Assembly (NCBI RefSeq): GCF_000143415.4
Contig: NW_003314532.1
Span: 1-15,108 of the forward strand
Reading direction: 5' to 3'
Source: Selaginella moellendorffii
Taxonomy: Eukaryota > Plantae > Lycopodiophyta
Length of the DNA stretch: 15,108 nt
The notes under the pieces were generated by a model. The model was given only the letters and a program-made list of their open reading frames with translations, did not search any database and had not been told where the DNA came from. This document shows, piece after piece, positions 1-15,108 of the stretch. The first letter of the stretch is position 1, and every line of letters starts with the position of its first letter. The translations under genes were made by a program, and so were the position numbers.

Positions 1-1070
1 CCCAAATTACCTAAGGTATTCCGGTAGCCAATGCTGCTGAGGTAATAGCAGCAGTGATCATGACTCCCAACTGGCCATCAGTGAGACGAGTGACACAGAC
101 ATCTCAAACTTCATAATTCAGGTGTTGAAGAATATTCATAGCTCTTCTTAGATACTGCCACAGTTTCCTCCCTGCTCTAAAAGACATTTCAAATTCTTTT
201 AAGGCTTGTTAATCTCAACCAGTAGATTTTGGCATATGCTTAGTTCCTAGCATTTGACATTATGAAACTAGCTTATTCATTTAAATATATAAGCACTAGC
301 AAGAGAATCCAGCTCCATTTAAAATATTAATATTAAATATAAAATTTTTAACAGTTTATTTAAAATACTTTTAAAAAATTTGGTGTCCAACATCTACCTT
401 TATTTAATAATATTATTAATAAATCACGAGTCAAGCCAAGTTGTAAGAACATGAAACATTCCTAGATCATATAGTTGTTTTTATAGTTAAAACTTAGAGC
501 GTACAAAATCTAAGAATTTTAAACTTTATATCTAAAAGAATAAGTTCTAATTAGAAAATAATTTATAAAAATAAAATATGACCCATAATTAATAGCAAAG
601 AAATGTTTAACAAAATTAAAGACATTTGACACTCATAGCATACGTTAGATTTATTTATTTATAAGTAAGTTGATACACCACATTATAATCATAATTTGTA
701 ATGGACTTATCAAAGATATATACCAATCACCTCAAATGAAAACAAATAAAAACACACTAAATTTTTTAAAGTGATATGTTAAATATCTTAATATAAAAAT
801 TATAAAACATAAATCAACAACATCTATTGCAATTACTATAAAAAATAAAATTTAGTTTTCTTATAAATATATTTTAACATATTTCTTTTATAGCAAAAAA
901 AAACAATATTAGATAAGAATAATAATATAGAGCAATCTATTGTATTAAGGCAATTATAATTAGTTCTCAGCTGTTAGATCTTAAGCATGTGCCTAGAATA
1001 AGTATTGGCTTTTACATTTAACATATGAGTATATGAGTTTCAGTTTCACTGGATGTTAATTTAAAAATTA

Positions 1071-1184
1071 TAGTTTAATACAATTATAGTTTCTATATTA
1101 TTAATTTTCTGTCTAAGAAAGTTTTGTTAAATTTGATAACATTCTTTGATATGCTATAAGAGACACATGTTAGGATATATTAGA
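1071..1184 (+). repeat. Left arm of a long inverted repeat bounding the Fic island
   Basis: 1114-1151 (taagaaagttttgttaaatttgataacattctttgata) is the exact reverse complement of 5097-5134. Similarity extends outward (tagtttaataca...ttctatattatta vs taataatatagaa...tgtattaaacta) and inward (tatgctataagagacacatgttagg...atattaga vs tctaatat...ccaaacatgtatcccttatagcata), with ~10-bp indels. Confidence 0.9.
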
Positions 1185-1286
1185 GCTCCTTGCCAAGAAA
1201 TCCATGCCCGTCAATCATCGAGTCTATGTCTTTTCTTCAGGGACAAAACAATTGATATAAGCCATCACTACCCCCTTCTCTACGTG

Positions 1287-1519
1287 ATGGAGTACTACGC
1301 AATTGAAAGGAGGGCAATTCCAGTCCGGACGATCGTCACCACCGGGGTTTGTGCCTGTGGTTTCCAAGCAAAAAGGTTGGTGCTGCTTACCATGTGCTAA
1401 GTGCTGGTGCTGGTCACCAACGCTTACGTAGCCCCCAGCCCAACCCAGAGTTTACAGCTTCCGTGGTGGCTCCAAAAGCCCGAGCCAACTTCCAGGTTTC
1501 CAAGATGGCCATGAGATGA
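1287..1519 (+). CDS. Possible small spliced ORF (58 aa, MEYYAIERRAIPVRTIVTTGVCACGFQAKSPQPNPEFTASVVAPKARANFQVSKMAMR); unknown function
   Basis: TATAA-like motif near 1256, ATG at 1287, candidate 56-nt GT..AG intron 1376-1431 that restores frame to TGA 1517-1519. No recognisable homology. Confidence 0.2.
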
Positions 1520-2033
1520 GCATGGGAGGACTTTTCTATCTATGTTGGATGGTCTGATGCGAGAACAGTGGCTTGGAGCGAAGGTCGATCGAACATTAGT
1601 AAGTCGATAAAGGCTAACCTCAAGAGCAGGGAGCCAAGTTTGAGATGTGTCACCTGCGGCCCGTTTAGACTTGGATTTCCGGAGATAGTGGTGAGCAAGG
1701 CAAGGCTGGTAAGCCACTGTCAGACAGGCAGCGAAAAGGCGAGAGCGATTCCATAGACGAGCTCGTCCAGCAAATATTCATGCATGACACGTTAGTCAGG
1801 TAAGCCCCATCTTATAGCAAAGCTGTAAACGAAGGGGATCTGTCCTCACGAAAGCATCCATTGCTAGTTTTCACTGGAGCATGCCATGGATAGTTGTGCT
1901 CAAGGAAAGTTTTTGAGTTGTCTTGGTTCACAGCTTTTTATTGGACAATGCAGAAGTTCTAGCGTAGTCATGTAAAGAAGTAGAAAAGAAAAAAAATACC
2001 AGGACAAACTTTCCCCTGTCTTCCTGTTCGAGA

Positions 2034-2861
2034 TCACTGGAGCTTCGATTTAAGGAACTCTCTCCATGCAGCGTCTGTTCCCTGGAGGCTGCCGAGTAGA
2101 ATCTTTGCCAGCTCGTCTTCGTCATCCTCCTCGAAAGCAGTGATGAACCTGTCCCGGGATCCGTGCTCAGCTGCAGTGAAGAAGGCCGCTGGGAAGGCTG
2201 AAATGCGACGCAGCAGGTGCAGCGCAAGCAGGCGTCCAACACGCCCATTACCATCTTCAAACGGATGGATCTTCTCGAAGTCGATGATGAGCCTTGCGAC
2301 CGTGGAGGCCCATTTGGCGATGCTCAGCTTGCTCTTGCTGTGCTCCGCGATGCTTGCATTGAGACGGTCCAGGAACTTCCGCATCTTGACCTGGATGTCT
2401 CGGGGATGTGCGTAACTCTTTCCAGCAGAGGACATGGCACCATAACTGCGGAATGCCGAGACCGGTGTCAGCTGTAAAGCTTCGTGCAGTTGTAACAGCT
2501 GCAGGGTCGTGATGGGTGAGCTCTCCGGCCAGGACCTGATGACGGCAAGACCTCTCAAGAGCCCTGCGGATCGAGCAGGATCGTCCAAGCCATGGGACGT
2601 AGCAACTTTGATAGCTTGGGTGTCCCAGAAGGCCTCAAACCTGGAGTAGATTGGATAAGTACGTGGAGAGAGCTGCGACATAAGACATACCAGAAGCCTG
2701 CGTGGTTGGACGGTGTAAGCAGTGGTTCTGGCTCCTTCTCCTTGCCAGCTTTTCCCCTTGGTTTCCTCACTGCAATATAAGCAAACACTATACGAGGTTG
2801 AGAGATCGAAATGCATACCAGCACTTCGGACGAGATTCAGAGCCGCGCGCCGCCCATCCAT
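2034..2861 (-). CDS. Fic/DOC-domain protein (putative AMPylase), probably spliced: exons 2861-2819, 2769-2691, 2640-2034 (242 aa)
   Basis: Canonical Fic motif HPFEDGNGRVGR at 2267-2232, preceded by the usual 'LLQLHEAL' helix and 'FR' flap region. Two canonical introns, GTATGC..TTGCAG (2818-2770, 49 nt) and GTATGT..CTCCAG (2690-2641, 50 nt), give an in-frame product MDGRRAALNLVRSAVRKPRGKAGKEKEPEPLLTPSNHAGFWFEAFWDTQ... Confidence 0.88.
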   Translation of the reverse strand: MDGRRAALNLVRSAGMHFDLSTSYSVCLYCSEETKGKSWQGEGARTTAYTVQPRRLLVCLMSQLSPRTYPIYSRFEAFWDTQAIKVATSHGLDDPARSAGLLRGLAVIRSWPESSPITTLQLLQLHEALQLTPVSAFRSYGAMSSAGKSYAHPRDIQVKMRKFLDRLNASIAEHSKSKLSIAKWASTVARLIIDFEKIHPFEDGNGRVGRLLALHLLRRISAFPAAFFTAAEHGSRDRFITAFEEDDEDELAKILLGSLQGTDAAWREFLKSKLQ

Positions 2862-3174
2862 GATACCAGCCGAGAGAAATTCACAAGTCCTGTGACCCTA
2901 GGAAGGTGCATTTCATGGAATCGTTGGAAATATGGCAATATCGATCTCCATACCTACACAGGCCGCGAGTTGCTCTTGGATCCTAGCTCTGCAGCAAGAA
3001 AAGGTAGCTGAGCGCTACACACCCGGGGCGAGAGGAGAAATCGATCGCTGACGCTGAGCCGGCCCGATCCAGCTAACAGGGAGCGATCTAGAGCAAGAAA
3101 CTATGAAATTTCGTTGTGATCGACCGAAGCGCCTACCCTGCGCTGGCGCTGGATCAATCGTTCACCCCGCCAGC

Positions 3175-3198
3175 GCCATCGCCATCGCCATCGCCATC
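3175..3198 (+). repeat. (GCCATC)4 hexamer microsatellite
   Basis: gccatc gccatc gccatc gccatc read directly. Confidence 0.9.
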
Positions 3199-3317
3199 GC
3201 GCTCACGCCGTCGCCTCGCCAAGCCCTGAAGAATGAGCTTGCGCCGACAGCCAATTATCGCGTGCCGCGTGTCAAAGCCCGGGAAATTCAAATGTACCCC
3301 TTTTCAAACCTTGGCTG

Positions 3318-3324
3318 TATAAAA
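3318..3324 (+). promoter_or_regulatory. TATA box upstream of the second Fic gene
   Basis: TATAAAA in GC-rich context, starting 41 bp upstream of ATG 3359 and 107 bp upstream of the better-context ATG at 3425 (agcATGG). Confidence 0.6.
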
Positions 3325-3358
3325 GGGGGCCCTTCTGGGTTGAGGCTAGGGCATATAG

Positions 3359-4279
3359 ATGGGGCGATACGCGGAGAGGCCCTTCTGGAGGTGCGATGGC
3401 GACGGAGCCCCGGCGACGAGCAGCATGGTGGACGCCATTTGTGGGTACGTGAAGAGGTTCCAGGCCCTGGACGGCGATGCCAAAGCATGGGCGCTGGACG
3501 TGTACGGGCAGCGCGACGCTATGGCCGACTTCCTCTTCCAGGTGAACAAGCTGGAGCTGGAAGGCTTTGATACCCGGGACCAAACACTCCACGCCCTGGA
3601 GCAGCTCCACGAAGTGGTGGCTCCAGACGAGAGATTGGAACAAGTCCGCTGCCTGTCCCGAGCATTCAACGCATGGTGGCTCCAGGAGGAGAAGGCCGAG
3701 GAGGCTCCCAGCGTCAACAACTACAAGCTCAGGCAGTCACACGAGCTTCTTATGGAGCCGAGCAGGCCGGAGATCGCAGGCTTGTTTCGTTCCGGCAGCG
3801 AGGTTGCAATGACGATCACGAGCAGCGGAAGGCAGCACTTCTACGCGGATGCCTGGGCAATCCGGCCCAAGTTGTCCAAGTTGGTGAGCAAGACTAACGC
3901 GGATGTGGAGCGGCTCTTTGAGGAGGAGGCGACGACAAGGAGCTGCAAGACGGTGGAGCAGCTCCTGGTGCTGGCCTCGGACTTCTTCTACAAGTTTGAG
4001 TGCATCCATCCGTTTGTGGATGGGAATGGGCGATGCGGGAGGATGATGCTGGCCTACTTGCTTCGCAGCGTGGCTGTGTTCCCCAATGTCTTGTTCGCTG
4101 CTGGCGCTGGCCGCCAGCACGAGTTTGTAGACCGGGATGTCTACCTCAAGTGCTTCGAGAGTGCTCGCGAGGATGACCACGAGCCCAGGGACCTGACTGC
4201 TCTCATCATAGAGGGGGTCTACTTCGGTTGGCAGAGGTTCTTTGTGGCCCTCGAGTCGTGGCAGGGCCTCAAGTTGTAG
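3359..4279 (+). CDS. Fic/DOC-domain protein (putative AMPylase), intronless, 306 aa (or 284 aa from ATG 3425)
   Basis: Canonical motif HPFVDGNGRCGR at 4007-4042; 'LRQSHELLM...AGLFR' pre-flap elements; N-terminal FQVNKLELEG resembling an inhibitory helix; GC-rich third codon positions. Confidence 0.92.
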   Translation: MGRYAERPFWRCDGDGAPATSSMVDAICGYVKRFQALDGDAKAWALDVYGQRDAMADFLFQVNKLELEGFDTRDQTLHALEQLHEVVAPDERLEQVRCLSRAFNAWWLQEEKAEEAPSVNNYKLRQSHELLMEPSRPEIAGLFRSGSEVAMTITSSGRQHFYADAWAIRPKLSKLVSKTNADVERLFEEEATTRSCKTVEQLLVLASDFFYKFECIHPFVDGNGRCGRMMLAYLLRSVAVFPNVLFAAGAGRQHEFVDRDVYLKCFESAREDDHEPRDLTALIIEGVYFGWQRFFVALESWQGLKL

Positions 4280-4447
4280 CGACCTCATACTTACCTCTCG
4301 CCCTCGAGAGGTTGCTCGAGCTCGCTTTCCAGCTCTATTTTTTCCTGGAAAGACCACCTGCCTTCCTCGGCCGCGTGTCAATGAAGAAAGCGAGCGACCC
4401 AAACATACCTTTGGACTGCCTCCAGTACTAGATGCACCGATCCATCG

Positions 4448-4808
4448 TCAAGCTTTCTGCTCGGCCGAACAAAAACTCTATGAGGAAGCATGGCAAAAGC
4501 TCACTACGTGACCAGGAACAAAGGGAGGAAAGCTTTACCTGATCGAAGGAGGTGCTCGTCTTTGCGTGATCATCCCTGGAGCTTTGCATGCCCCAGATTC
4601 CAACGACGATCTCTCCACGACTTTGAGCTAAACGAAACGTCTCGAGGATGCCTGCCGCACAGATCCTAGAAGCTTGACGATCTCTGGAAGGAAAGGAAAA
4701 CAACGACATATCGTCGCGCAATGCAGGCAGATCTTACTCGCGTGATTCCACCAGCGCAACCCTGGCGACATCGAAGAGCTTCACATTCTCGCCTCCAGCG
4801 ATCCTCAT
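4448..4808 (-). CDS. Possible small three-exon gene (81 aa; exons 4808-4738, 4683-4539, 4477-4448) convergent with the second Fic gene; unknown function
   Basis: Strong donors GTAAGA (4737) and GTAAAG (4538) and pyrimidine-rich acceptors (..ttcctttccttccag 4684; ..cttcctcatag 4478) define introns of 54 and 61 nt. Splicing gives an open frame MRIAGGENVKLFDVARVALVESREDRQASRICAAGILETFRLAQSRGEIVVGIWGMQSSRDDHAKTSTSFDQSFCSAEQKA. A TA-rich box lies at ~4931-4946 upstream. Confidence 0.35.
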
Positions 4809-5047
4809 CCACCCCGAACAAGAACAAGAGAGAGAAATTAAACCCCAGAAAGGGACACCCGCAGGAATCGAACGCGTAACGGGACTTGGTGCGCAAAGAA
4901 TATTCGGCTCGTGATCCCCTTGTCATGTTGTATATATAAAACTATATACTACTCACTATATATTTAGAAATGTTAATTGCTTGCAGCTCATTGCAAATGC
5001 TCAGGAGAAAAGGCCAGAGCCTGAGGGACGTCTTAGGAGGGGATTTT

Positions 5048-5167
5048 TCTAATATGATGATGCCAAACATGTATCCCTTATAGCATAGTGTGATGGTATC
5101 AAAGAATGTTATCAAATTTAACAAAACTTTCTTATAATAATATAGAAAATTTAAATGTATTAAACTA
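5048..5167 (-). repeat. Right arm of the long inverted repeat bounding the Fic island
   Basis: 5097-5134 is the perfect reverse complement of 1114-1151, and flanking blocks also match with small indels. Confidence 0.9.
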
Positions 5168-7031
5168 GAAACTAGATAAATCCATCTAACATTATTAGTC
5201 TTAACATTATTAGGAGAAACTGATCAACCAGGGATGGCATAATGATCTTGAGGAAGAATCAATTCCCTCTCCAGCACTGTCCAACTTTTCTGCATACTCC
5301 ATCGAAGCTCACATAGTTTAGTTTGAAATGCAAAATCAATGTCACTCTTAGGTGGAATGCTTTTTTTGGTACATGAGGTAAAATGGATCCATTGCAGCCC
5401 TCAAAGAAATAACACACCAAAGGAAGCTTGCTGCTCTAGAGCAAATGAACATCCTCAAGAAGTTGGAAATGTCCCAGAAAAGGTGGTAGAGCTACAACAT
5501 GTGGATCAATGTGGTACCTACAAAATAGATAGCAATAAAAAGATAAGGACTTTACTGGAAAGAGTGTTTGCTCCAAAACAAAATACCTGTGAAGACCAAA
5601 TTCAACATGTGAATAACATTCCATAATTTCTTATGATTAAGCTATCAATTCCCATGGTTGATAAGAGCCATCCAAGTGATGGCATGAAAATGCTACAACC
5701 TTTGATGGGATACAGCCAATTCGTCCCATGTTGGATTTGCCATCACCAATCGAGGCTGTACACTGTCTGTACAGTGAGCGAGAGGAAGTAAATGTGGAAA
5801 AGGTGTTTGCCACTATCTTTCTCTTCTGGTTTGCTGCAAATATAACCAAAATTTCTCTTCACCAAGTACAAGGTACAATTTGTTAGTATTTTCTTCTCAA
5901 AAAACTTATAAAGCATGCTATTAAAGCTTTCTTGACATGCTCACCATCAAGATGAAGCTCAATTTTCTAATTAAAAACAAATTCGTGGATAAGATAAACA
6001 AGCCAAGGTACAACCCCGTCCAAAGAATTGAACATTGCTCTAATCCTCATGCTTGTTCTTGTTATACATAGAATATATGAAGAAGGCCTTCTTACCAAGG
6101 CAGTGCTTACCTTCATCAACCCGAGCTTTCAAAATCTTCTATTTTCTGGCCAACAGCTTTAAGCAGTGTTTTATTTCGGCTGCCAAAAAGCCATTTGAAA
6201 TGACTTTTTGGCAGAGAAAATGTTAAGCTTTAATACAAATTAGTGTCATTTGAAAAGTCTGTTGCCGGCAGTGGCTGGGCCGACAATTTCCTTAAGCAGC
6301 CTAAAAATTAAAGGAATTCAAAGAACCTGCAAGTTGCTTGAATGAAAACCCTTAATCCATGTATATCAGTAATAGCCCTGAAAACCTGAATATGCATCAA
6401 ATCGCCATCAAATATTTTCTCTTGCAGGGTTAAAGGTTCAAGGGTTATGCTTAATTAAACAGTCATAATTATTCAAAATGCCAAAAAGTAGCTTTGAATA
6501 AAACCCTGGCTTCAAGTAATTCATGAGCAGTCACAGTCCATCAAAAATCATTTTGGTAGAAAGCTTTTTGATTTTACCTGAGTGGTGCTTTCCACACCAC
6601 GGCTTGAATCTCACCACAGATTGCTGCAGTAGCATATGTTTGCAACGGCCGGGAAGCTGAAGGATTTTGAGGGGATTCTGGGCAAGAGGAGTGAGGGTGT
6701 GTGAGGGAGTTTGCACGGAAATTGGGAGATCCTTCACAGCATGAGCAGTGACCAAAGTAGCAACAGTGGTCTCTTGCTTTAATCCAGTGCCAACACTTGC
6801 AAGACTTCCTCCGACTGAAAAACAAGGAAATGTTTTAAGTTCATGTGAAACTTGCGAGAGCCTTAACTTGGATGTCAAAGACTTCACCAAGCTTCCAAAG
6901 CTCCAATCACTGCAGACAATGGAAGGACACAGCCATTAAGCTGTATAAATCCCTGATAATATGAGCAACTGACACTCCATCAGCATAGAGAAAGGAAAAT
7001 AGGGAGTGCTGTAAGAATAGAAGATATCGAG

Positions 7032-10532: not shown

Positions 10533-13401
10533 CTAATCCCTTTGTACGAAGCTTTTTAGCCGCTGCACATGCACAATCTCTGGAGGATCGGCCTGCTGAA
10601 CATCATGCTGAACCTCATAAACTTGTGGTCCAATTTGTCGCAACACTCAATACGGTCCTTTCCATTGCACAAGAAGCCCCTTAGATAAACCACGTACCGT
10701 AAGATGGGGAAAACGGACTAACACCAAATCATCCACTTTGTACTCCGCAGGTGGACAATGATGGGAGTTGTAGCGCCGTTGTTGTCCCACTTGTATGCGG
10801 CTTAAGTGTTCGGCAGACTCTGCTCGGACAAGTGGAAGAATGCTCGTCAAATACTGATCCCATGATCTAGCATCGGTAGCATGTGGCAATTGCGAAGGTA
10901 AACCCAACTCCATTGGTAATATTGGATCATGATCATATAGGAGTTTATATGGTGAAGCACCAATAGAACTCTGCACCCCTGTAACATATGCATACCGAAG
11001 AGACAGCAAATAACCATCCCAATCCGAATGCTGAAAGTTCACATACTTCGCAATCATCCCTTTGAATGTCCGAACAAGCCGTTCCACCAGACCGTCTAAT
11101 TGTGGATGATAAGCACTTGTGAAAGTGTGGCATATCCCCAACCAAGACGTCAAAACATGAAATGCCTCAGCCATAAATGCGGGACTATTATCCGAAAGAA
11201 TCCGCTTTGGACAAGAATGCTGGAACACCACTCGATTGAGGAGGAAGTATCCAACAGCAATTGCAGAGGCGCTAGCAAGAGCACCAACTTCCACCCAACG
11301 AGTCAAGTAGTCAAAAGCAATAATAATATACTCATTGCCAGCAGTCAACCATGGAAAAGGTCCCATAAGATCGAACACCATTAACTCAAATGGACGGGAA
11401 ACCGCAATTGACTCCAACCGTCCTTCTGCAGCACGAGGGGGAGTATTACAAGCTTGGCACCAAACGCAGCTACGCACATACTGGATAATATCACGTTGCA
11501 TCTCCGGCCAATAGAAAGACCTGCGCAACTTCTCGGTAACACGACGGTGTCCCATATGCCCACCTAGAACAGAAGAATCATGGTAGGCATGGAAAAACCA
11601 TGGAATAAATACCAAAGGCACCACCAGCCGTAAATGATCATCAGGATTCGTCCCCACAAAATAAAGAAGGCCATCGTCAAGGCAATATTGAGAATGTAAA
11701 TGCCGGAAAGGAAAGTCATCAGCAAGGGATGCAGGATTCTCAAACCCATCTCGAAGCCTCTGAATCCACGGCTCAATCTTTTGAGCCTCGCGAACCTCAT
11801 CAAGAGAAGGTAGATCTTGCTCTGCACCTTGTGGACACTGAACGTCAAGGACAGCAACCGCCGACAGCACAGAATCCTCATCTAGAAAATCCACAGATGC
11901 TGGAACAACAGGTTTGTCAGAAATATGAGAAGTGAGTGGCGAAGGAAGAGGAGCTCGAGAAAGGGTATCAGCATCAGCCATAGAACTCCCTGGGCGATGA
12001 ACAACATCGAAATCATATATCTGAAACTTCAAAGCCCATCGAGCCGTACGACCAACCAGGTTTTTCCGCTTCAATAATGAAGTAACAGCAGCATGGTCAC
12101 CTTCAAGTAACGTCCGAGAACCATGTAGATAGGCATGAAGTTTCTCGAAACCCCAGACTGCTGCTAAACACTTCTTCTCCATCGTGGAGTAGTTCATCTC
12201 TACTGGTTGTAATGTACGGCTTATGTATGCAATAGGATGGCACTGACCCGGCACACTCGAGCTCTCTTGCATCAACACACCTCCAAGACCAATGTTAGAA
12301 GCATCCACGCGCAAAATAAAAGGTCGAGTGTAGTCAGGATATGCCAAAACCGGAGGAGTCGTCAATAGTTCTTTGAGATCCATGAATGCTTGCTCACAAT
12401 CCAGAGACCAGATAAAAGATGACGTTGATGACTTCAACAACGCTCGCAATGGTGTAGTGTGATCAGAAAGATGATCCACAAAAAGACCAAGATACTGCAC
12501 CTTACCCAAAAAGCGCTGCATATCATTCACACACTTCGGAGTAGGGAACTTTAGAACAGCCATAAGTTTGTTAGGATCAACTTGCAAACCCTCACGAGAA
12601 ATACGGTACCCAAGATAAGTTGTGTCCTTGGACCCAAACACACACTTTGACCGCTTCAGCTTTAAACCAATGTCGCGTAGCCGATCCAACACTTTACAAA
12701 CATCACGAACGTGCTCCTCCCACGTCCCCTCCGAGTGGATCAAGACATCATCAATGAAGTCAGCAGTCACCTCTGGCATATCACAAAGAACCTCGTCCAT
12801 CATCCGCTGGAAAGTTGCTGGAGCATTGTTCAAATCAAACGGCATCACCAAGAACTCGTACAAACCAAATGGTGTACGAAAAGCAGTCTTAGGAATATCT
12901 TCTTCGGCCATCAGTACTTGCCAATACCCAGAAGCAAGACCTAGCTTGGTGAACCAACGACTTCGCCCCAGACAATCCAAGAGATTAGCAGTGTGAGGAA
13001 GAGGATACACATCTTTTAATGGACGATAGTCGATTACTTCGTCCACTCACTTCGTTTAATGGACGATAGTCGATGCAGAAACGAATACTCCCATCAGGCT
13101 TCGTCACAAGATGAAGTTCATATGTCCAAGGACTCCGCGACTTCCGAATAACACCCTTCTCTAGCATTTCCTTGACGTTTGCTCGTAAAATCTTGATCTC
13201 CTTAGGTGATCGACGATGAACAAGAACCTTGATTAGACGAGCATCCCCGGTTGGAATCGGATGACGTGTGGCAATCTTGGCCCCAAAAAATAAGTCAAAT
13301 TCAAAGAGATCAGAATACTCCTTCATGAGCCGGTCAACTGCTGCAACACAAAGATCGTCGGAGGGATCAGAAAAGGGAAAAGCAGAACAAGATGGAAACA
13401 C
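10533..13401 (-). pseudogene. pol: Gypsy pol pseudogene (RT, RNase H, integrase with GPY/F tail)
   Basis: RT: SPW..KPDGSIRFCIDYRPLN, KTAFRTPFGLYEFLVMPF, FIDD. RNase H: VDAS, DH, DTLSR. IN: H..H..CxxC, D-D-E (VFDLMGP, ILSDN, GLVER), WKGPY..VHVQRLK. Lesions: frameshifting insertion at ~13015-13055, KLGL for KLDL, PFDL for PFGL, EKK for EKE, premature TGA at 10647-10649. Confidence 0.92.
13015..13074 (+). repeat. 20-bp perfect direct repeat disrupting RT
   Basis: tttaatggacgatagtcgat at 13015-13034 and 13055-13074. Confidence 0.95.
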
Positions 13402-13626: not shown

Positions 13627-13910
13627 TTAGGACGGAGAATGCTTGTCTATAAGCTCCTGGGAGAAGGTCCATAGCTTGTGAGCGAGCTCGGGATCTCTAC
13701 CATAAGCACTACAGTTGGATTTGTTGGACTCCACGAAGTATTGCCTGGTGATGTCCTTGAGGCTTGGATGTAAAGCTGTGTAGCACGTTGTAGCAGCGCC
13801 CTGAGAGATCAATCACGTATTAGTCATGAAAAACTTCCAGATAATTGGGAGAATTCTTCTTACCTGTGGCACATTTTTCCAAAGGAAGCTGGAGAAGAAC
13901 TTGAGAATCC
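13627..13910 (-). pseudogene. Last two exons (13910-13864, 13800-13627) of a Tic32/retinol-dehydrogenase-like short-chain dehydrogenase; upstream exons absent
   Basis: ILKFFSSFLWKNVPQ|GAATTCYTALHPSLKDITRQYFVESN...DPELAHKLWTFSQELI matches the C-terminal pattern of plant RDH/Tic32-like SDRs (K.VPQGAATTCY.ALHP...G.YF.D.N...D..LA.KLW.FS); 63-nt GT..AG intron. Confidence 0.8.
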
Positions 13911-13981: not shown

Positions 13982-14142
13982 TTAGGACGGAGAATGCTTG
14001 TCTATAAGCTCCTGGGAGAAGGTCCATAGCTTGGGAGCGAGCTCGGGTTCTCTGCCATAAGTGCTACAGTTGGATTTGTTGGAATCCACAAAGTATTGCC
14101 TGGTGACGTCCTTGAGGCTTGGATGTAAAGCTGTGTAGCACG
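13982..14142 (-). pseudogene. Second, 5'-truncated copy of the SDR last exon
   Basis: CYTALHPSLKDVTRQYFVDSNKSNCSTYGREPELAPKLWTFSQELIDKHSPS*; lacks the splice acceptor and the GAAT start of the exon. Confidence 0.8.
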
Positions 14143-14226
14143 ATGATGATTCTGGCTGCTTTCTCCTCACCAATCTTCTCGCAAATATGCTATATTTAAA
14201 AGACCAAATAATTATGGAATAACGCC

Positions 14227-15108
14227 TTAAGAAAGGAAGGCAATATTTCCACCAACGAACGTAACCACTCGAGGAAAAATGCCCGTGCCCTGTCCAAAAG
14301 GAGACTCGGGCAACACCACAAAGTCGGCAAACTTTCCTGGCATCAGCGACCCAACCAAATCCTCCAATGCAGCTGCATACACAGCCGAGGATGTGTACGT
14401 GTGAATCCAAAAACAAGGACTGCATTTCAGCTTCTCATCTGTTTTCTCTTACCCTACCACTGCGTCCTATGCAGAAATCCTTTCCTCGGGAATCCAGGGA
14501 TGACTCCAGCCTGAAGGTGTTCTCTCCACAGCTGTGCGGATCCCTCCAACTGGATTCACTGCTACCACCTTGAGACAAACCATTCACGTAATGCCGAAGA
14601 AAAAGTATTTGACAGGCTTACAGGCCAGTTGGATCCTAGAGCAACCACACTACCGTTTCCGAGGAGGGACTGGAGGTTATAAGATCTGCGTGAGTGCTTC
14701 TCACCAAGTTTCTTCATGGCGTAGTAAGCATCATCTAGAAGTTTCTCTGGCTGTGCAAAAATATAGGGTTTTGCAATGGAGGCAAAATGCACTCATCTGC
14801 TTACTTGCATCGACACAGATATGGAGAACTTCCCAAATTTGAGGTGTGCTCCAGGTGAAAGGTGCTGTGCATGCTCTACCTGCAATCCCACAAGTTCAGT
14901 GATACAAACGTAGATTTGTTCATCATTACTCTCAATCGATGTCCTTGACGAGGATGTTTAGAAATAGCGTCAGTGTAAATTCCAAGTACATCATCGTATG
15001 CTGCATCACCAATTGCATGTACTGCTAACTGAAGTTCATGATTAAGCATTGGATCAAGGATCATGTAAGTACCTGTAATTTCAACTCAGAAGCAGCACTC
15101 ACCGACTC
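14227..15108 (-). pseudogene. 3' half of an amidohydrolase-3 family gene (LAF3/YtcJ-like), probably pseudogenised; exons ..15073, 15028-14930, 14879-14805, 14750-14622, 14568-14453, 14398-14227
   Basis: Spliced translation gives LAVHAIGD..HRLR|VEHAQHL..SMQ|PEKLLDD..LGSNWP|VVAVNP..W.PEERIS..|YT..A.YAA..ED.VGSL.PGKFADFVVL..TFVGG, which are family hallmarks. Lesions: in-frame TAG at 14469-14467, GSNWP for GSDWP, last intron ends in AC (14400-14399). Confidence 0.88.

What the first reader, a model, noticed from the sequence alone, without database searches (positions are those of the whole stretch)
2034..4279. Stand-alone Fic proteins unlike animal FICD: candidate horizontal acquisition in a land plant
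Both proteins are ~240-300 aa and lack the N-terminal transmembrane segment and TPRs of metazoan FICD/HYPE, so they resemble stand-alone bacterial or viral-type Fic proteins. To my recollection Fic genes are not a standard part of flowering-plant genomes (needs checking). The two share little beyond the motif region and the following 'LLR...FP..F.A' segment, which implies an old duplication or a lineage-specific family.
Basis: partly seen in the sequence, partly recalled or inferred. Interest (0 to 1): 0.72.

Follow-up and report, generated by a model that had tools for sequence, protein, structure and literature searches.

The report
Plant Fic (AMPylase-type) gene pair
Two intact neighbouring genes in the lycophyte Selaginella moellendorffii encode stand-alone Fic (AMP-transferase type) enzymes from a gene family shared with ferns, more distantly with green algae, a soft coral and giant viruses, so they are real plant genes of old origin and not a recent bacterial import.

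Summary
ORF1 (2034-2861, minus strand, 275 aa) and ORF2 (3359-4279, plus strand, 306 aa) both hit Pfam Fic at about 1e-13 and both carry a canonical HPFxDGNGRxxR motif.

The window is Selaginella moellendorffii. The public JGI models of both genes (SELMODRAFT_427920 and 427919) wrongly splice out the Fic motif.

ORF2 lies in intron-free transcript contigs from four studies. It has near-copies under purifying selection (dN/dS about 0.35) and folds confidently into a FICD/BT_2513-like class II Fic (Z 25).

Selaginella holds at least ten such loci among ordinary plant genes. With fern genes they form one clade (98/96), and two subfamilies each hold a lycophyte and a fern member.

The next relatives are not bacterial. 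They form a stand-alone eukaryotic family with a shared N-terminal PxWR...TSxM motif, found in green algae, an octocoral and bona fide giant-virus contigs. The best prokaryotic hits are at most 30% identical, over the Fic core only.

The horizontal-transfer reading is therefore only partly supported. Any transfer predates the lycophyte-fern split, and its source is unresolved.

ORF1 is a very divergent, weakly expressed member. It lacks the N-terminal motif and the conserved inhibitory glutamate.

The scan flagged other Fic loci in this same genome.

The parts
2034..2861 (-). ORF1: a divergent stand-alone Fic protein of 275 aa
   Evidence: The ORF is and hits Pfam Fic at 9.7e-14. The AF2 model is confident for the core from about residue 95 to 275; residues 1-52 score under pLDDT 50. 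The best structural matches are FICD. Only one of four runs gives low-depth transcript contigs, at 1956-2191 and 2712-3161.
2232..2267 (-). ORF1 catalytic Fic motif HPFEDGNGRVGR (residues 199-210)
   Evidence: These are invariant columns of alignment A4; translation.
2897..2952 (-). 56-nt GT-AG intron in the ORF1 5' leader; the upstream exon reaches at least 3161
   Evidence: A joint in a transcript contig of run X1. The donor and acceptor were read. No in-frame extension and no PxWR motif lie in the upstream exon.
2862..3358 (.). 497-bp divergent intergenic region shared by the two genes. It holds a (GCCATC)n run at about 3162-3215 and TGTATAAAAGG at 3316-3326, just upstream of the ORF2 ATG.
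   Evidence: Sequence. Transcript contigs of ORF2 start at 3216, 3287, 3327 and 3328. Promoter function is inferred, not shown.
3359..4279 (+). ORF2: stand-alone class II Fic protein of 306 aa, intronless
   Evidence: Pfam Fic 8.3e-13. Transcript contigs from four studies cover it fully with no joint inside. The AF2 model has pLDDT 92 and pTM 0.92. VIA-align gives Z 25.2 to FICD. dN/dS is 0.34-0.37 against paralogues L001 and L002.
3374..3391 (+). N-terminal family motif ERPFWR (residues 6-11), followed by ATSSMVDAI
   Evidence: P8, W10 and R11 are nearly invariant in the 41-sequence alignment A3. The motif is shared by most of the non-plant family and is recognisable in a giant-virus MAG protein.
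3545..3565 (+). NKLELEG (residues 63-69): the putative inhibitory-helix motif with the conserved E66
   Evidence: E66 and G69 are nearly invariant in A3. The profile column of E66 aligns with FICD E234 in TVAIEGN. Its contact with the second motif arginine is inferred, not measured.
4007..4042 (+). ORF2 catalytic Fic motif HPFVDGNGRCGR (residues 217-228)
   Evidence: Invariant columns; DNA read.
4330..4893 (-). Spliced minus-strand transcript overlapping the 3' end of ORF2. It has small GT-AG introns at 4457-4538 and 4684-4737, and an alternative one at 4356-4406.
   Evidence: Joints with CT..AC ends on the plus strand were seen in one to four runs. There is no Pfam hit on its unspliced ORFs and no Rfam hit. 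Whether it is a neighbouring gene or an antisense RNA is open.
1068..1192 (.). Left arm of an imperfect inverted repeat that brackets the block
   Evidence: the repeat finder pairs I1, I3 and I4, with a 38-nt perfect core at 1114-1151; alignment; sequence.
5045..5172 (.). Right arm of the inverted repeat
   Evidence: No target-site duplication is visible. Paralogue loci L001 and L002 do not share these ends.
1631..1731 (-). Remnant of the first exon of an alpha/beta-hydrolase gene, the same neighbour that sits beside the Fic paralogue in L002
   Evidence: blastn gives 82.6% over 109 nt to L002 9275-9382. The L002 gene hits Hydrolase_4 and Abhydrolase. The peptide YQPCLAxHYL is shared.

Best explanation
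The two ORFs are genuine nuclear genes of Selaginella moellendorffii. They encode stand-alone, soluble Fic-domain enzymes and belong to a multigene family of lycophytes and ferns that grew by duplication inside the plant lineage.

ORF2 is a typical, expressed, selectively constrained member. It has the family's N-terminal PxWR...TSxM motif, an N-terminal inhibitory-helix-like motif with a conserved glutamate, a FICD/BT_2513-like class II Fic fold with a beta-hairpin flap, and a complete HPFxDGNGRxxR active site. By analogy with FICD and bacterial class II Fic proteins, it most likely transfers AMP from ATP to a Ser/Thr/Tyr hydroxyl of an unknown cytosolic or nuclear target. The glutamate would hold it in an auto-inhibited or de-AMPylating state. 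This activity is inferred, not shown.

ORF1 is a long-branch, weakly transcribed relative. It keeps the catalytic motif and core fold but has lost the N-terminal motif, one helix and the conserved glutamate. It is either a deregulated variant or a gene drifting towards loss.

The plant family is one branch of a wider stand-alone Fic family of eukaryotes and giant viruses. It entered or was already present in the plant lineage before lycophytes and ferns split. It is not a recent bacterial transfer.
For: Identity and organism: the closest database entries are SELMODRAFT_427919 and 427920 on one 694-kb scaffold. They are identical to the ORFs up to wrongly placed introns that remove the Fic motif.

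Real genes: Pfam hits, and confident AF2 models of ORF2 (pLDDT 92) and of the ORF1 core. The ORF2 model matches FICD at Z 25.2 over 254 residues and BT_2513 at Z 24.7, against Z 12-13 for class I and III Fic proteins. The family profile hits FICD best in the PDB (E 5e-21), with the family glutamate on FICD E234.

Expression: contigs that carry GT-AG joints, and are therefore RNA-derived, cover ORF2 end to end without a joint in four studies. ORF1 is covered partly and weakly in one.

Selection: dN/dS is 0.34-0.37 among window ORF2, L001 and L002.

Family: four further loci (L090-L093) are intact single exons of 341-363 aa. They lie among PPR, Dicer-like, LRR-kinase, WD40 and other plant genes. 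More members carry RefSeq 'fic-1' and UniProt 'Fido domain' names, including a tandem group.

Phylogeny (IQ-TREE, LG+C20, 83 rows): the plant clade has support 98/96 and the ORF2-plus-fern core 100/97. Selaginella P0037 pairs with Adiantum P0035 (87/60). Placing ORF1 inside the plant clade costs 1.09 lnL, p-AU 0.475.

Wider family: 301 profile hits at E<=1e-10, most of the best 150 with the PxWR motif. Named members are Dendronephthya, Apatococcus and Chlamydomonas euryale. Family members also sit on a giant-virus MAG next to a D5 primase-helicase gene and on a 180-kb contig 1 kb from an NCLDV major capsid gene.

No bacterial donor: the best hits among 185,579 prokaryotic species are at most 30% identical, cover the Fic core only, and carry the canonical (S/T)xxxEGN motif without PxWR.

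Composition: the GC content of the Fic genes (0.54-0.60) equals that of ordinary Selaginella genes in L001 and L002.
Against: No enzymatic evidence exists, and the target is unknown.

Strand of the ORF2 transcript is not established. In three runs the same contigs continue into a minus-strand spliced RNA, so part of the coverage could be antisense.

The position of the plant clade relative to the algal, animal and viral clade is unresolved (supports 22-65). FICD itself could not be put in the tree because no tool returned its sequence.

Absence from seed plants and bryophytes rests only on named hits among the best 150 of one exhaustive search and two word searches.

The ORF1 N-terminal alignment lies in a low-confidence part of its model, so the loss of the glutamate there is an alignment-based inference.
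Confidence: 0.78

Rival explanations
1. Ancient giant-virus route: an NCLDV carrying a PxWR-type Fic gene integrated into an ancestor of vascular plants. The gene was domesticated and expanded, and the same viruses account for the patchy spread in green algae, cnidarians and others.
For: Family members lie on two bona fide NCLDV contigs, identified by a D5 primase-helicase, AEP_C962R and 2C_adapt neighbours on one and a major capsid protein on the other. Another member (P0057) sits among Bro-N, KilA-N and ORFan genes on a 3.1-Mb contig. The four viral rows scatter through the eukaryotic clade. Selaginella is already reported to hold one NCLDV-derived gene family (PMC4083422). All plant copies are intronless.
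Against: No viral sequence falls inside or next to the plant clade. No NCLDV hallmark genes lie near the plant loci. PMC4083422 does not list Fic among the Selaginella NCLDV-like genes. Viruses may equally have taken the gene from their hosts.
Confidence: 0.25
2. Old vertical inheritance: the stand-alone Fic family was already present in early Viridiplantae, or earlier eukaryotes, and was lost repeatedly, for example in seed plants.
For: Chlorophyte members exist (Apatococcus, Chlamydomonas euryale). The plant clade is monophyletic, with lycophyte plus fern in two subfamilies. GC content is host-like and the neighbours are host genes. The N-terminal motif is shared across eukaryotic members.
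Against: In the trees the plant clade is not sister to the algal clades; the algal sequences group with unnamed and viral ones. The distribution is very patchy. The lack of introns in every plant copy is unusual for an old plant gene.
Confidence: 0.3
3. Recent horizontal transfer from a bacterium, or bacterial contamination of the assembly.
For: Fic proteins are overwhelmingly bacterial and often mobile (PMC4454073). The ORFs are intronless and stand out in GC against AT-rich flanks.
Against: The best prokaryotic matches are at most 30% identical over the Fic core only and lack the family N-terminus. Prokaryotic rows are separated from the plant, eukaryote and virus set at 97/94 and 99. GC content is normal for Selaginella genes. 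The copies lie on Mb-scale scaffolds among plant genes. Transcripts carry plant-type 50-80-nt GT-AG introns in the leader and neighbouring RNA. A Ty3/gypsy element and plant gene fragments lie in the same window.
Confidence: 0.03
4. ORF1 is not a working enzyme gene but a decaying duplicate that happens to keep an open frame.
For: ORF1 has the longest branch in every tree (2.2-3.6 substitutions per site). It has lost the PxWR motif, one helix and the conserved glutamate. Its first 52 residues are predicted disordered. Only one of four runs shows low-depth contigs. The related block in L001 keeps only its first 243 nt.
Against: An 828-nt open frame carries a perfect 12-residue catalytic motif, and the core is confidently folded. 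It is transcribed with a spliced leader.
Confidence: 0.3
5. The whole block from 1068 to 5172 is a mobile cassette: a non-autonomous element with terminal inverted repeats, of the Pack-MULE type, that captured Fic genes and gene fragments.
For: Inverted repeats of about 115-125 nt with a 38-nt perfect core bracket the block. The block also holds a hydrolase exon remnant and a 44-nt piece of a transcript from elsewhere.
Against: No target-site duplication is visible. There is no transposase. The repeat core is absent from all other fetched loci. The related copies L001 and L002 share only inner parts, not the ends. The genome itself could not be searched for further copies.
Confidence: 0.12

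Closest known systems
FICD / HYPE (human) and FIC-1 (C. elegans), the metazoan ER AMPylase/de-AMPylase of BiP
   Same: FICD is the best solved-structure match for both ORFs. For ORF2, Z is 25.2 over 254 residues at rmsd 3.6, spanning FICD 157-441. The family profile scores E 5e-21 against it. Both have a class II layout with the inhibitory motif N-terminal to the Fic core, the conserved glutamate aligned to E234, and a full HPFxDGNGRxxR motif.
   Different: The ORFs have no membrane anchor and no Pfam TPR hit. Identity to FICD is only 18-19%. The ORFs carry a distinct N-terminal PxWR...TSxM motif. The inhibitory motif reads NxxExxG or ExEG instead of TxxxEGN. They form a multigene family instead of a single gene. 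FICD could not be placed in the tree.
Bacterial class II Fic proteins (BT_2513 / PDB 3cuc, Dde_2494 / 4rgl, SoFic, CdFic)
   Same: Stand-alone size, and the same fold with nearly equal scores (Z 24.7 and 23.5). Auto-inhibition comes from an N-terminal glutamate.
   Different: Sequence identity is 16-20%. The bacterial proteins carry the canonical (S/T)xxxE(G/N) motif and lack the PxWR N-terminus. In the trees they are separated from the plant, eukaryote and virus set.
Unnamed stand-alone 'PxWR' Fic family of eukaryotes and giant viruses (Dendronephthya LOC114525749/LOC114525795, Apatococcus WJX74_005211, Chlamydomonas euryale EP00955_P005187, GVMAG-M-3300021444-4)
   Same: Full-length collinear matches (E 1e-32 to 1e-15). 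The N-terminal motif, the NxxExxG motif, the Fic motif and the C-terminal IEGxxxGW helix are shared.
   Different: Identity to ORF2 is 20-29%. The plant genes form their own clade outside the 40-row non-plant clade. Many non-plant members carry C-terminal extensions.
Other Selaginella and fern Fic genes (RefSeq 'adenosine monophosphate-protein transferase fic-1' XP_024542721; UniProt 'Fido domain-containing protein' D8SRP9; Adiantum L7F22_068990 and L7F22_021529)
   Same: They belong to the same plant clade (98/96). ORF2 is 36-37% identical to the fern proteins over nearly the full length.
   Different: The window genes themselves are not recognised as Fic in the public JGI models, because those models remove the motif. 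ORF1 has no close relative at all.

Membership tests
Fic/Fido superfamily (Pfam PF02661) | Profile match above the curated threshold | tested here: met
   ORF1 scores 52.4 bits and ORF2 49.4 bits against a cut-off of 24.
Fic/Fido superfamily (Pfam PF02661) | Catalytic motif HxFx(D/E)GN(G/K)RxxR complete | tested here: met
   HPFEDGNGRVGR in ORF1 and HPFVDGNGRCGR in ORF2.
Fic/Fido superfamily (Pfam PF02661) | All-helical Fic core with a beta-hairpin flap | tested here: met
   The ORF2 model has pLDDT 92, with strands at 152-155 and 158-161 before the core helices, and Z 25 to FICD. The ORF1 core is confident and also matches FICD best.
Fic/Fido superfamily (Pfam PF02661) | AMP (or other nucleotide or phospho) transfer to a target hydroxyl | not testable with these tools
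   This needs an in vitro assay.
Class II Fic (inhibitory helix N-terminal to the core, same chain) | Conserved glutamate in an N-terminal helix motif that aligns with the inhibitory glutamate of a solved class II protein | tested here: inconclusive
   In ORF2, E66 is nearly invariant in the family and its profile column aligns with FICD E234. However, the motif is NxxExxG, not (S/T)xxxE(G/N), and the salt bridge could not be measured. In ORF1, the aligned positions are T88 and H90, so the feature is not met by alignment.
FICD/HYPE orthologues | N-terminal transmembrane anchor | tested here: not met
   There is no hydrophobic segment outside the core helix.
FICD/HYPE orthologues | Two TPR motifs before the Fic domain | tested here: not met
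   There is no Pfam TPR hit. The structural alignment starts at FICD residue 157, so at most the end of the TPR and linker region is matched.
Eukaryote/NCLDV 'PxWR' stand-alone Fic family (unnamed) | N-terminal ExPxWR...(S/T)(S/T)xM(L/V)xxI motif plus collinear full-length similarity | tested here: met
   ORF2 has ERPFWR...ATSSMVDAI. ORF1 does not meet it: it has only LSTSYSV and no PxWR, also in its upstream exon.
Class I Fic toxin-antitoxin modules (VbhT/VbhA, FicT/FicA) | Small adjacent antitoxin gene that supplies the inhibitory helix | tested here: not met
   No such ORF lies beside either gene. Structural scores to VbhT and EcFicT are only Z 12-13.
TIR DNA transposon / Pack-MULE | Terminal inverted repeats, a target-site duplication, and several copies with the same ends | tested here: inconclusive
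   Inverted repeats are present. No duplication is visible at the ends. The repeat core is absent from the other loci held, and the related copies do not share the ends. The genome-wide copy number could not be tested.

The most novel reading that the evidence does not exclude
A stand-alone Fic family carried by giant viruses was taken up by an ancestor of vascular plants and expanded in lycophytes. In this head-to-head pair the two copies have divided the labour known from FICD. ORF1, which lacks the inhibitory glutamate, would act as a constitutive AMPylase (writer). ORF2, which keeps it, would act as a regulated AMPylase/de-AMPylase (eraser). Both would be driven from one 497-bp bidirectional promoter.
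Probability: 0.1. Interest if true: 0.75.

Novelty: new member of a known kind. Interest (0 to 1): 0.45.

Why it matters
[quoted passage not shown] This locus, its many paralogues in Selaginella, the fern genes and the green-algal members show that statement is too broad. They define a stand-alone, FICD-like Fic family with its own N-terminal motif, shared by several eukaryotic lineages and giant viruses.

This gives plant biologists an unstudied candidate system for reversible AMPylation. One paralogue has a signal peptide and another a nuclear-localisation-like tail. It also gives evolutionary biologists a test case for virus-mediated versus vertical spread.

In practical terms, the JGI v1 models of at least seven Selaginella Fic loci need correction, because they splice out the catalytic motif.

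The novelty is limited. RefSeq and UniProt already label some paralogues as Fic or Fido proteins, and a 2015 survey mentions plant Fic sequences (PMC4454073).

Tried and rejected
- Bacterial donor: the GTDB scan found only distant, core-only matches, so this idea was rejected.
- tRNA or other RNA in the 4820-4925 stretch, which looked like a T-arm by eye: ARAGORN and Rfam found nothing.
- GC island as a sign of foreign DNA: rejected, because ordinary Selaginella genes in L001 and L002 have the same GC content.
- FICD orthologues in the tree: the 455-460-aa hits I suspected to be FICD have their Fic domain at residues 110-215 and are bacterial. P0175 is only weakly FICD-like. So FICD is missing from the trees.
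- Organism names: three cluster look-ups gave names for only a few of the non-plant members. DNA of the Adiantum locus could not be fetched. The species behind the fern-like transcripts P0004 and P0006 remains unknown.
- N-terminal extension of ORF1 through its upstream exon: none was found.
- Literature: searches for Fic together with Selaginella, ferns, land plants or giant viruses found nothing.
- The 44-nt transcript match at 1183-1226: its flanks are not in the window.
- The first careful tree and the AU test each needed several runs. The tree with viral rows is a quick search only.
Full report
**1. What is in the sequence**

The window holds two head-to-head ORFs exactly at the ends given: 2034-2861 on the minus strand (275 aa, ORF1) and 3359-4279 on the plus strand (306 aa, ORF2). 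Both pass Pfam Fic well above the curated threshold (E 9.7e-14 and 8.3e-13). Both carry a full catalytic motif, HPFEDGNGRVGR in ORF1 and HPFVDGNGRCGR in ORF2. They are 30% identical over 183 residues. Neither has a Pfam TPR hit or a transmembrane-like segment.

**2. Organism and annotation**

The closest database proteins are SELMODRAFT_427919 and 427920 of Selaginella moellendorffii, neighbours on one 694-kb scaffold. Their sequences equal ORF2 and ORF1 up to points where the JGI models jump into other frames, which removes the Fic motif.

Four other Selaginella loci show the same error. There the annotated span is in fact one intact ORF of 341-363 aa with a complete motif. These loci lie among PPR, PHD, Dicer-like, LRR-kinase, Aquarius, WD40, tRNA-methyltransferase and mitochondrial-carrier genes, which is ordinary plant chromatin.

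The GC content of the Fic genes (0.54-0.60) matches that of ordinary genes in loci L001 and L002 (0.57-0.61). The 'GC island' is therefore just the normal contrast between Selaginella genes and AT-rich spacers. The window also holds a Ty3/gypsy pol ORF. Contamination can be excluded.

**3. Expression and constraint**

Contigs of four runs from four studies were laid on 900-5400. They contain small joints whose ends read CT..AC on the plus strand, that is, GT-AG on the minus strand, so they derive from RNA.

ORF2 is covered end to end with no mismatches and no joint inside the ORF in three runs (3216-4456, 3287-4359 and 3327-4456), and piecewise in the fourth. The gene is therefore intronless, and the JGI intron is wrong.

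ORF1 is seen in only one run, at low depth (1956-2191 and 2712-3161). It has a 56-nt GT-AG intron in its leader (2897-2952).

One caveat applies. In three runs the ORF2 contig continues into a minus-strand spliced RNA, with introns at 4457-4538 and 4684-4737 and an alternative one at 4356-4406. Unstranded contigs cannot say how much of the ORF2 coverage is sense.

Two near-copies of ORF2 exist. L001 is 94.7% identical at the DNA level over window 2619-4839, and L002 is 90% identical over 3317-4265. dN/dS among the three is 0.34-0.37, with dS 0.02-0.17, which indicates purifying selection. The L001 copy has a stop at codon 10 and would start at Met-23.

**4. Structure**

With a 41-sequence alignment, AlphaFold2 gives ORF2 a model with pLDDT 92 and pTM 0.92. 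It is all-helical with a beta-hairpin at 152-161.

Foldseek and VIA-align rank human FICD first (Z 25.2, 254 residues, rmsd 3.6, FICD 157-441). Next come Bacteroides BT_2513 (Z 24.7), C. elegans FIC-1 (24.4) and Dde_2494 (23.5). Class I and III Fic proteins (VbhT, EcFicT, NmFic) reach only Z 12-13.

The family profile also hits FICD best among PDB sequences (E 5e-21). It places the family's nearly invariant glutamate (E66 of ORF2, in NKLELEG) on FICD's inhibitory E234.

ORF1 gives a weaker model (pLDDT 75). Residues 1-52 are unstructured, but the core is confident and again most like FICD. In two independent alignments ORF1 has Thr and His where the family has E66 and E68. It also lacks the PxWR motif and one helix.

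**5. The family**

An exhaustive profile search of 1.84 billion representatives found 12 proteins at E<=1e-30. All are from Selaginella, Adiantum nelumboides or fern-like transcript contigs. There were 301 hits at E<=1e-10.

Selaginella has at least ten distinct loci:
- the two genes in the window;
- L001 and L002, and a further model near L002;
- L090 to L093;
- SELMODRAFT_414686;
- the RefSeq 'fic-1' genes;
- a tandem group of 'Fido domain-containing' genes.

Earlier first-stage notes of this scan had also flagged Fic clusters on other pieces of this genome.

Most of the next-best hits (E 1e-32 to 1e-15) match the whole length of the profile. They share an N-terminal motif ExPxWR...(S/T)(S/T)xM(L/V)xxI, an NxxExxG motif, and the Fic motif, mostly as HPFxDGNGR(L/M)CR.

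Few of these hits carry a name:
- the octocoral Dendronephthya gigantea;
- the green algae Apatococcus lobatus and Chlamydomonas euryale;
- a chytrid, Borealophlyctis nickersoniae, whose placement is unstable between trees.

Many others lie on Mb-scale ENA contigs or transcript-sized Logan contigs.

**6. Giant viruses**

Scans of IMG/VR found family members on NCLDV contigs.

One is a 315-aa protein with a recognisable N-terminal motif and HPFGDGNGRLCR on GVMAG-M-3300021444-4. Its neighbours are a D5-type primase-helicase, an AEP_C962R primase domain, 2-cysteine-adaptor proteins and an HMG-box protein.

Another is a 239-aa member on a 180-kb contig, 1 kb from an NCLDV major capsid gene.

A further member (P0057) lies among Bro-N, KilA-N and ORFan genes on a 3.1-Mb contig.

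**7. Phylogeny**

A careful IQ-TREE analysis was run (LG+C20+F+G4 PMSF, 83 rows, 310 columns). Left out were deep-search hits without a Fic motif or outside 240-520 aa, and near-duplicates. The results were:
- a plant clade of all 13 Selaginella and fern rows other than ORF1 (98/96);
- an inner clade of ORF2-type plus fern genes (100/97);
- a second plant group in which Selaginella P0037 pairs with Adiantum P0035 (87/60);
- a non-plant eukaryotic clade of 40 rows (97/97);
- a split between these, together with a few small unnamed groups, and the main prokaryotic rows (97/94).

The order among the plant clade, the non-plant clade and the small groups is unresolved (22-65).

ORF1 is the longest branch and floats. 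Forcing it into the plant clade costs 1.09 log-likelihood units (p-AU 0.475), so membership is not rejected.

A quick tree with four viral rows was also built, after dropping 16 long or redundant rows. The viruses scatter within the non-plant clade (92). All of it is separated from the eight prokaryotic rows (99). The plants remain outside the virus, alga and animal clade.

FICD could not be included, because no tool returned its sequence.

**8. Origin**

A scan of one genome for each of 185,579 prokaryotic species gave best matches of at most 30% identity. These are restricted to the Fic core (residues about 124-268), carry the canonical (S/T)xxxEGN motif and lack PxWR. A recent bacterial transfer is therefore excluded.

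Two plant subfamilies each hold a lycophyte and a fern member. The family therefore most simply dates to before the lycophyte-euphyllophyte split and was inherited vertically afterwards.

How it arrived is open. It may have descended from an early green or eukaryotic ancestor with many losses, or it may have arrived through a giant virus.

No seed-plant, bryophyte or charophyte protein was among the named hits. Most hits are unnamed, so absence is not proven. Khater and Mohanty (PMC4454073) already mention plant Fic sequences in a mixed clade. A 2025 review says FIC is absent from plants and fungi (PMC12409994).

**9. Mechanism**

Shown here:
- complete active-site motifs;
- a class II FICD-like fold;
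- a conserved N-terminal glutamate in ORF2;
- transcription and purifying selection.

Inferred from established knowledge of FICD and bacterial class II Fic proteins:
- ORF2 transfers AMP from ATP to a hydroxyl side chain of a target.
- It is held inactive, or biased towards de-AMPylation, by the glutamate.
- It acts in the cytosol or nucleus, because no signal peptide is present.

ORF1 lacks that glutamate. It is either a deregulated enzyme or a decaying copy.

**10. The surrounding block**

An imperfect inverted repeat (1068-1192 and 5045-5172, with a 38-nt perfect core) brackets the whole gene-bearing block. No target-site duplication or transposase is present. The related copies L001 and L002 share only inner segments, so mobility of the block is unproven.

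A 100-nt remnant of an alpha/beta-hydrolase exon at 1631-1731 matches the gene that sits next to the Fic paralogue in L002. This shows that the loci are related by segmental duplication. ORF1 was either inserted here or lost from L002.

**12. Verdict**

This is a real and correctly located pair of Fic genes. It belongs to an under-appreciated plant Fic family that databases have partly annotated. The family is FICD-like in fold, distinct in architecture, and related to a eukaryote and giant-virus family. The horizontal-transfer idea survives only in an ancient, unresolved form.

Noticed in passing
window 10647-13401 (-): There is a long open Ty3/gypsy-type pol: a 799-aa ORF with RVT_1, RNase H, integrase zinc-binding and rve domains. 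A further 138-aa ORF lies just upstream in another frame. It looks like a fairly young LTR retrotransposon.
   Followed up: partly
window 13627-13812 (-) and 13982-14425 (-): Two ORFs end in nearly the same 55-residue peptide (...CYTALHPSLKD(I/V)TRQYF...KLWTFSQELIDKHSPS). This is a local duplication of a gene's last exon. There was no Pfam hit.
   Followed up: no
window 14562-15064 (-): Exon-like ORFs give a weak Amidohydro_3 match (E 0.004). They are probably part of a plant amidohydrolase gene that runs off the window.
   Followed up: no
window 4330-4893 (-): A spliced minus-strand RNA has three small GT-AG introns (82 nt, 54 nt and an alternative 51 nt). It overlaps the 3' end of ORF2 and is assembled with it in one contig in three runs. 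Its unspliced ORFs give no Pfam hit, and there is no Rfam hit. It could be a convergent neighbour or a natural antisense RNA.
   Followed up: partly
window 1183-1226: A 44-nt stretch matches, with 2 mismatches, an internal piece of a 772-nt transcript whose flanks are not in the window. It looks like a captured exon fragment.
   Followed up: partly
window 3162-3215: A (GCCATC)n microsatellite lies in the shared intergenic region of the two Fic genes. The copy in L001 is shorter.
   Followed up: no
L091 4001-5092 and L093 4001-5026: Paralogue L091 starts with a signal-peptide-like MLLRFILAIALVIAVDARASG, so it may be ER-targeted or secreted, like FICD. Paralogue L093 ends in RPKKRRRKSDKRS, which is like a nuclear localisation signal. 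This suggests the family works in several compartments.
   Followed up: no
L001 9935-10855: The near-copy of ORF2 in L001 has a stop at codon 10 (W to stop), which removes the PxWR motif. The ORF from Met-23 is otherwise intact, with dS 0.02 to the window copy.
   Followed up: partly
L090-L093, window, L001, L002: The JGI v1 gene models of at least seven Selaginella Fic loci each introduce an intron that excises the Fic motif. As a result, these proteins carry no Pfam domain in the databases.
   Followed up: yes
L094 6334-9122: Two Fic genes lie in tandem (306 aa and 315 aa) on scaffold GL377636. Three more models of the same 90% cluster are on that scaffold, which points to a recent local amplification of the second plant subfamily.
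   Followed up: partly
L098 529-12516 and L095 311-12508: Giant-virus contigs carry a family member next to D5 primase-helicase, AEP_C962R, 2-cysteine-adaptor and HMG-box genes (L098), or 1 kb from the NCLDV major capsid gene (L095).
   Followed up: yes
L089 1-20897: A Fic family member (P0057) lies on a 3.1-Mb ENA contig, in a dense run of ORFan genes with Bro-N and KilA-N proteins. This may be an integrated giant-virus element in an algal genome.
   Followed up: partly
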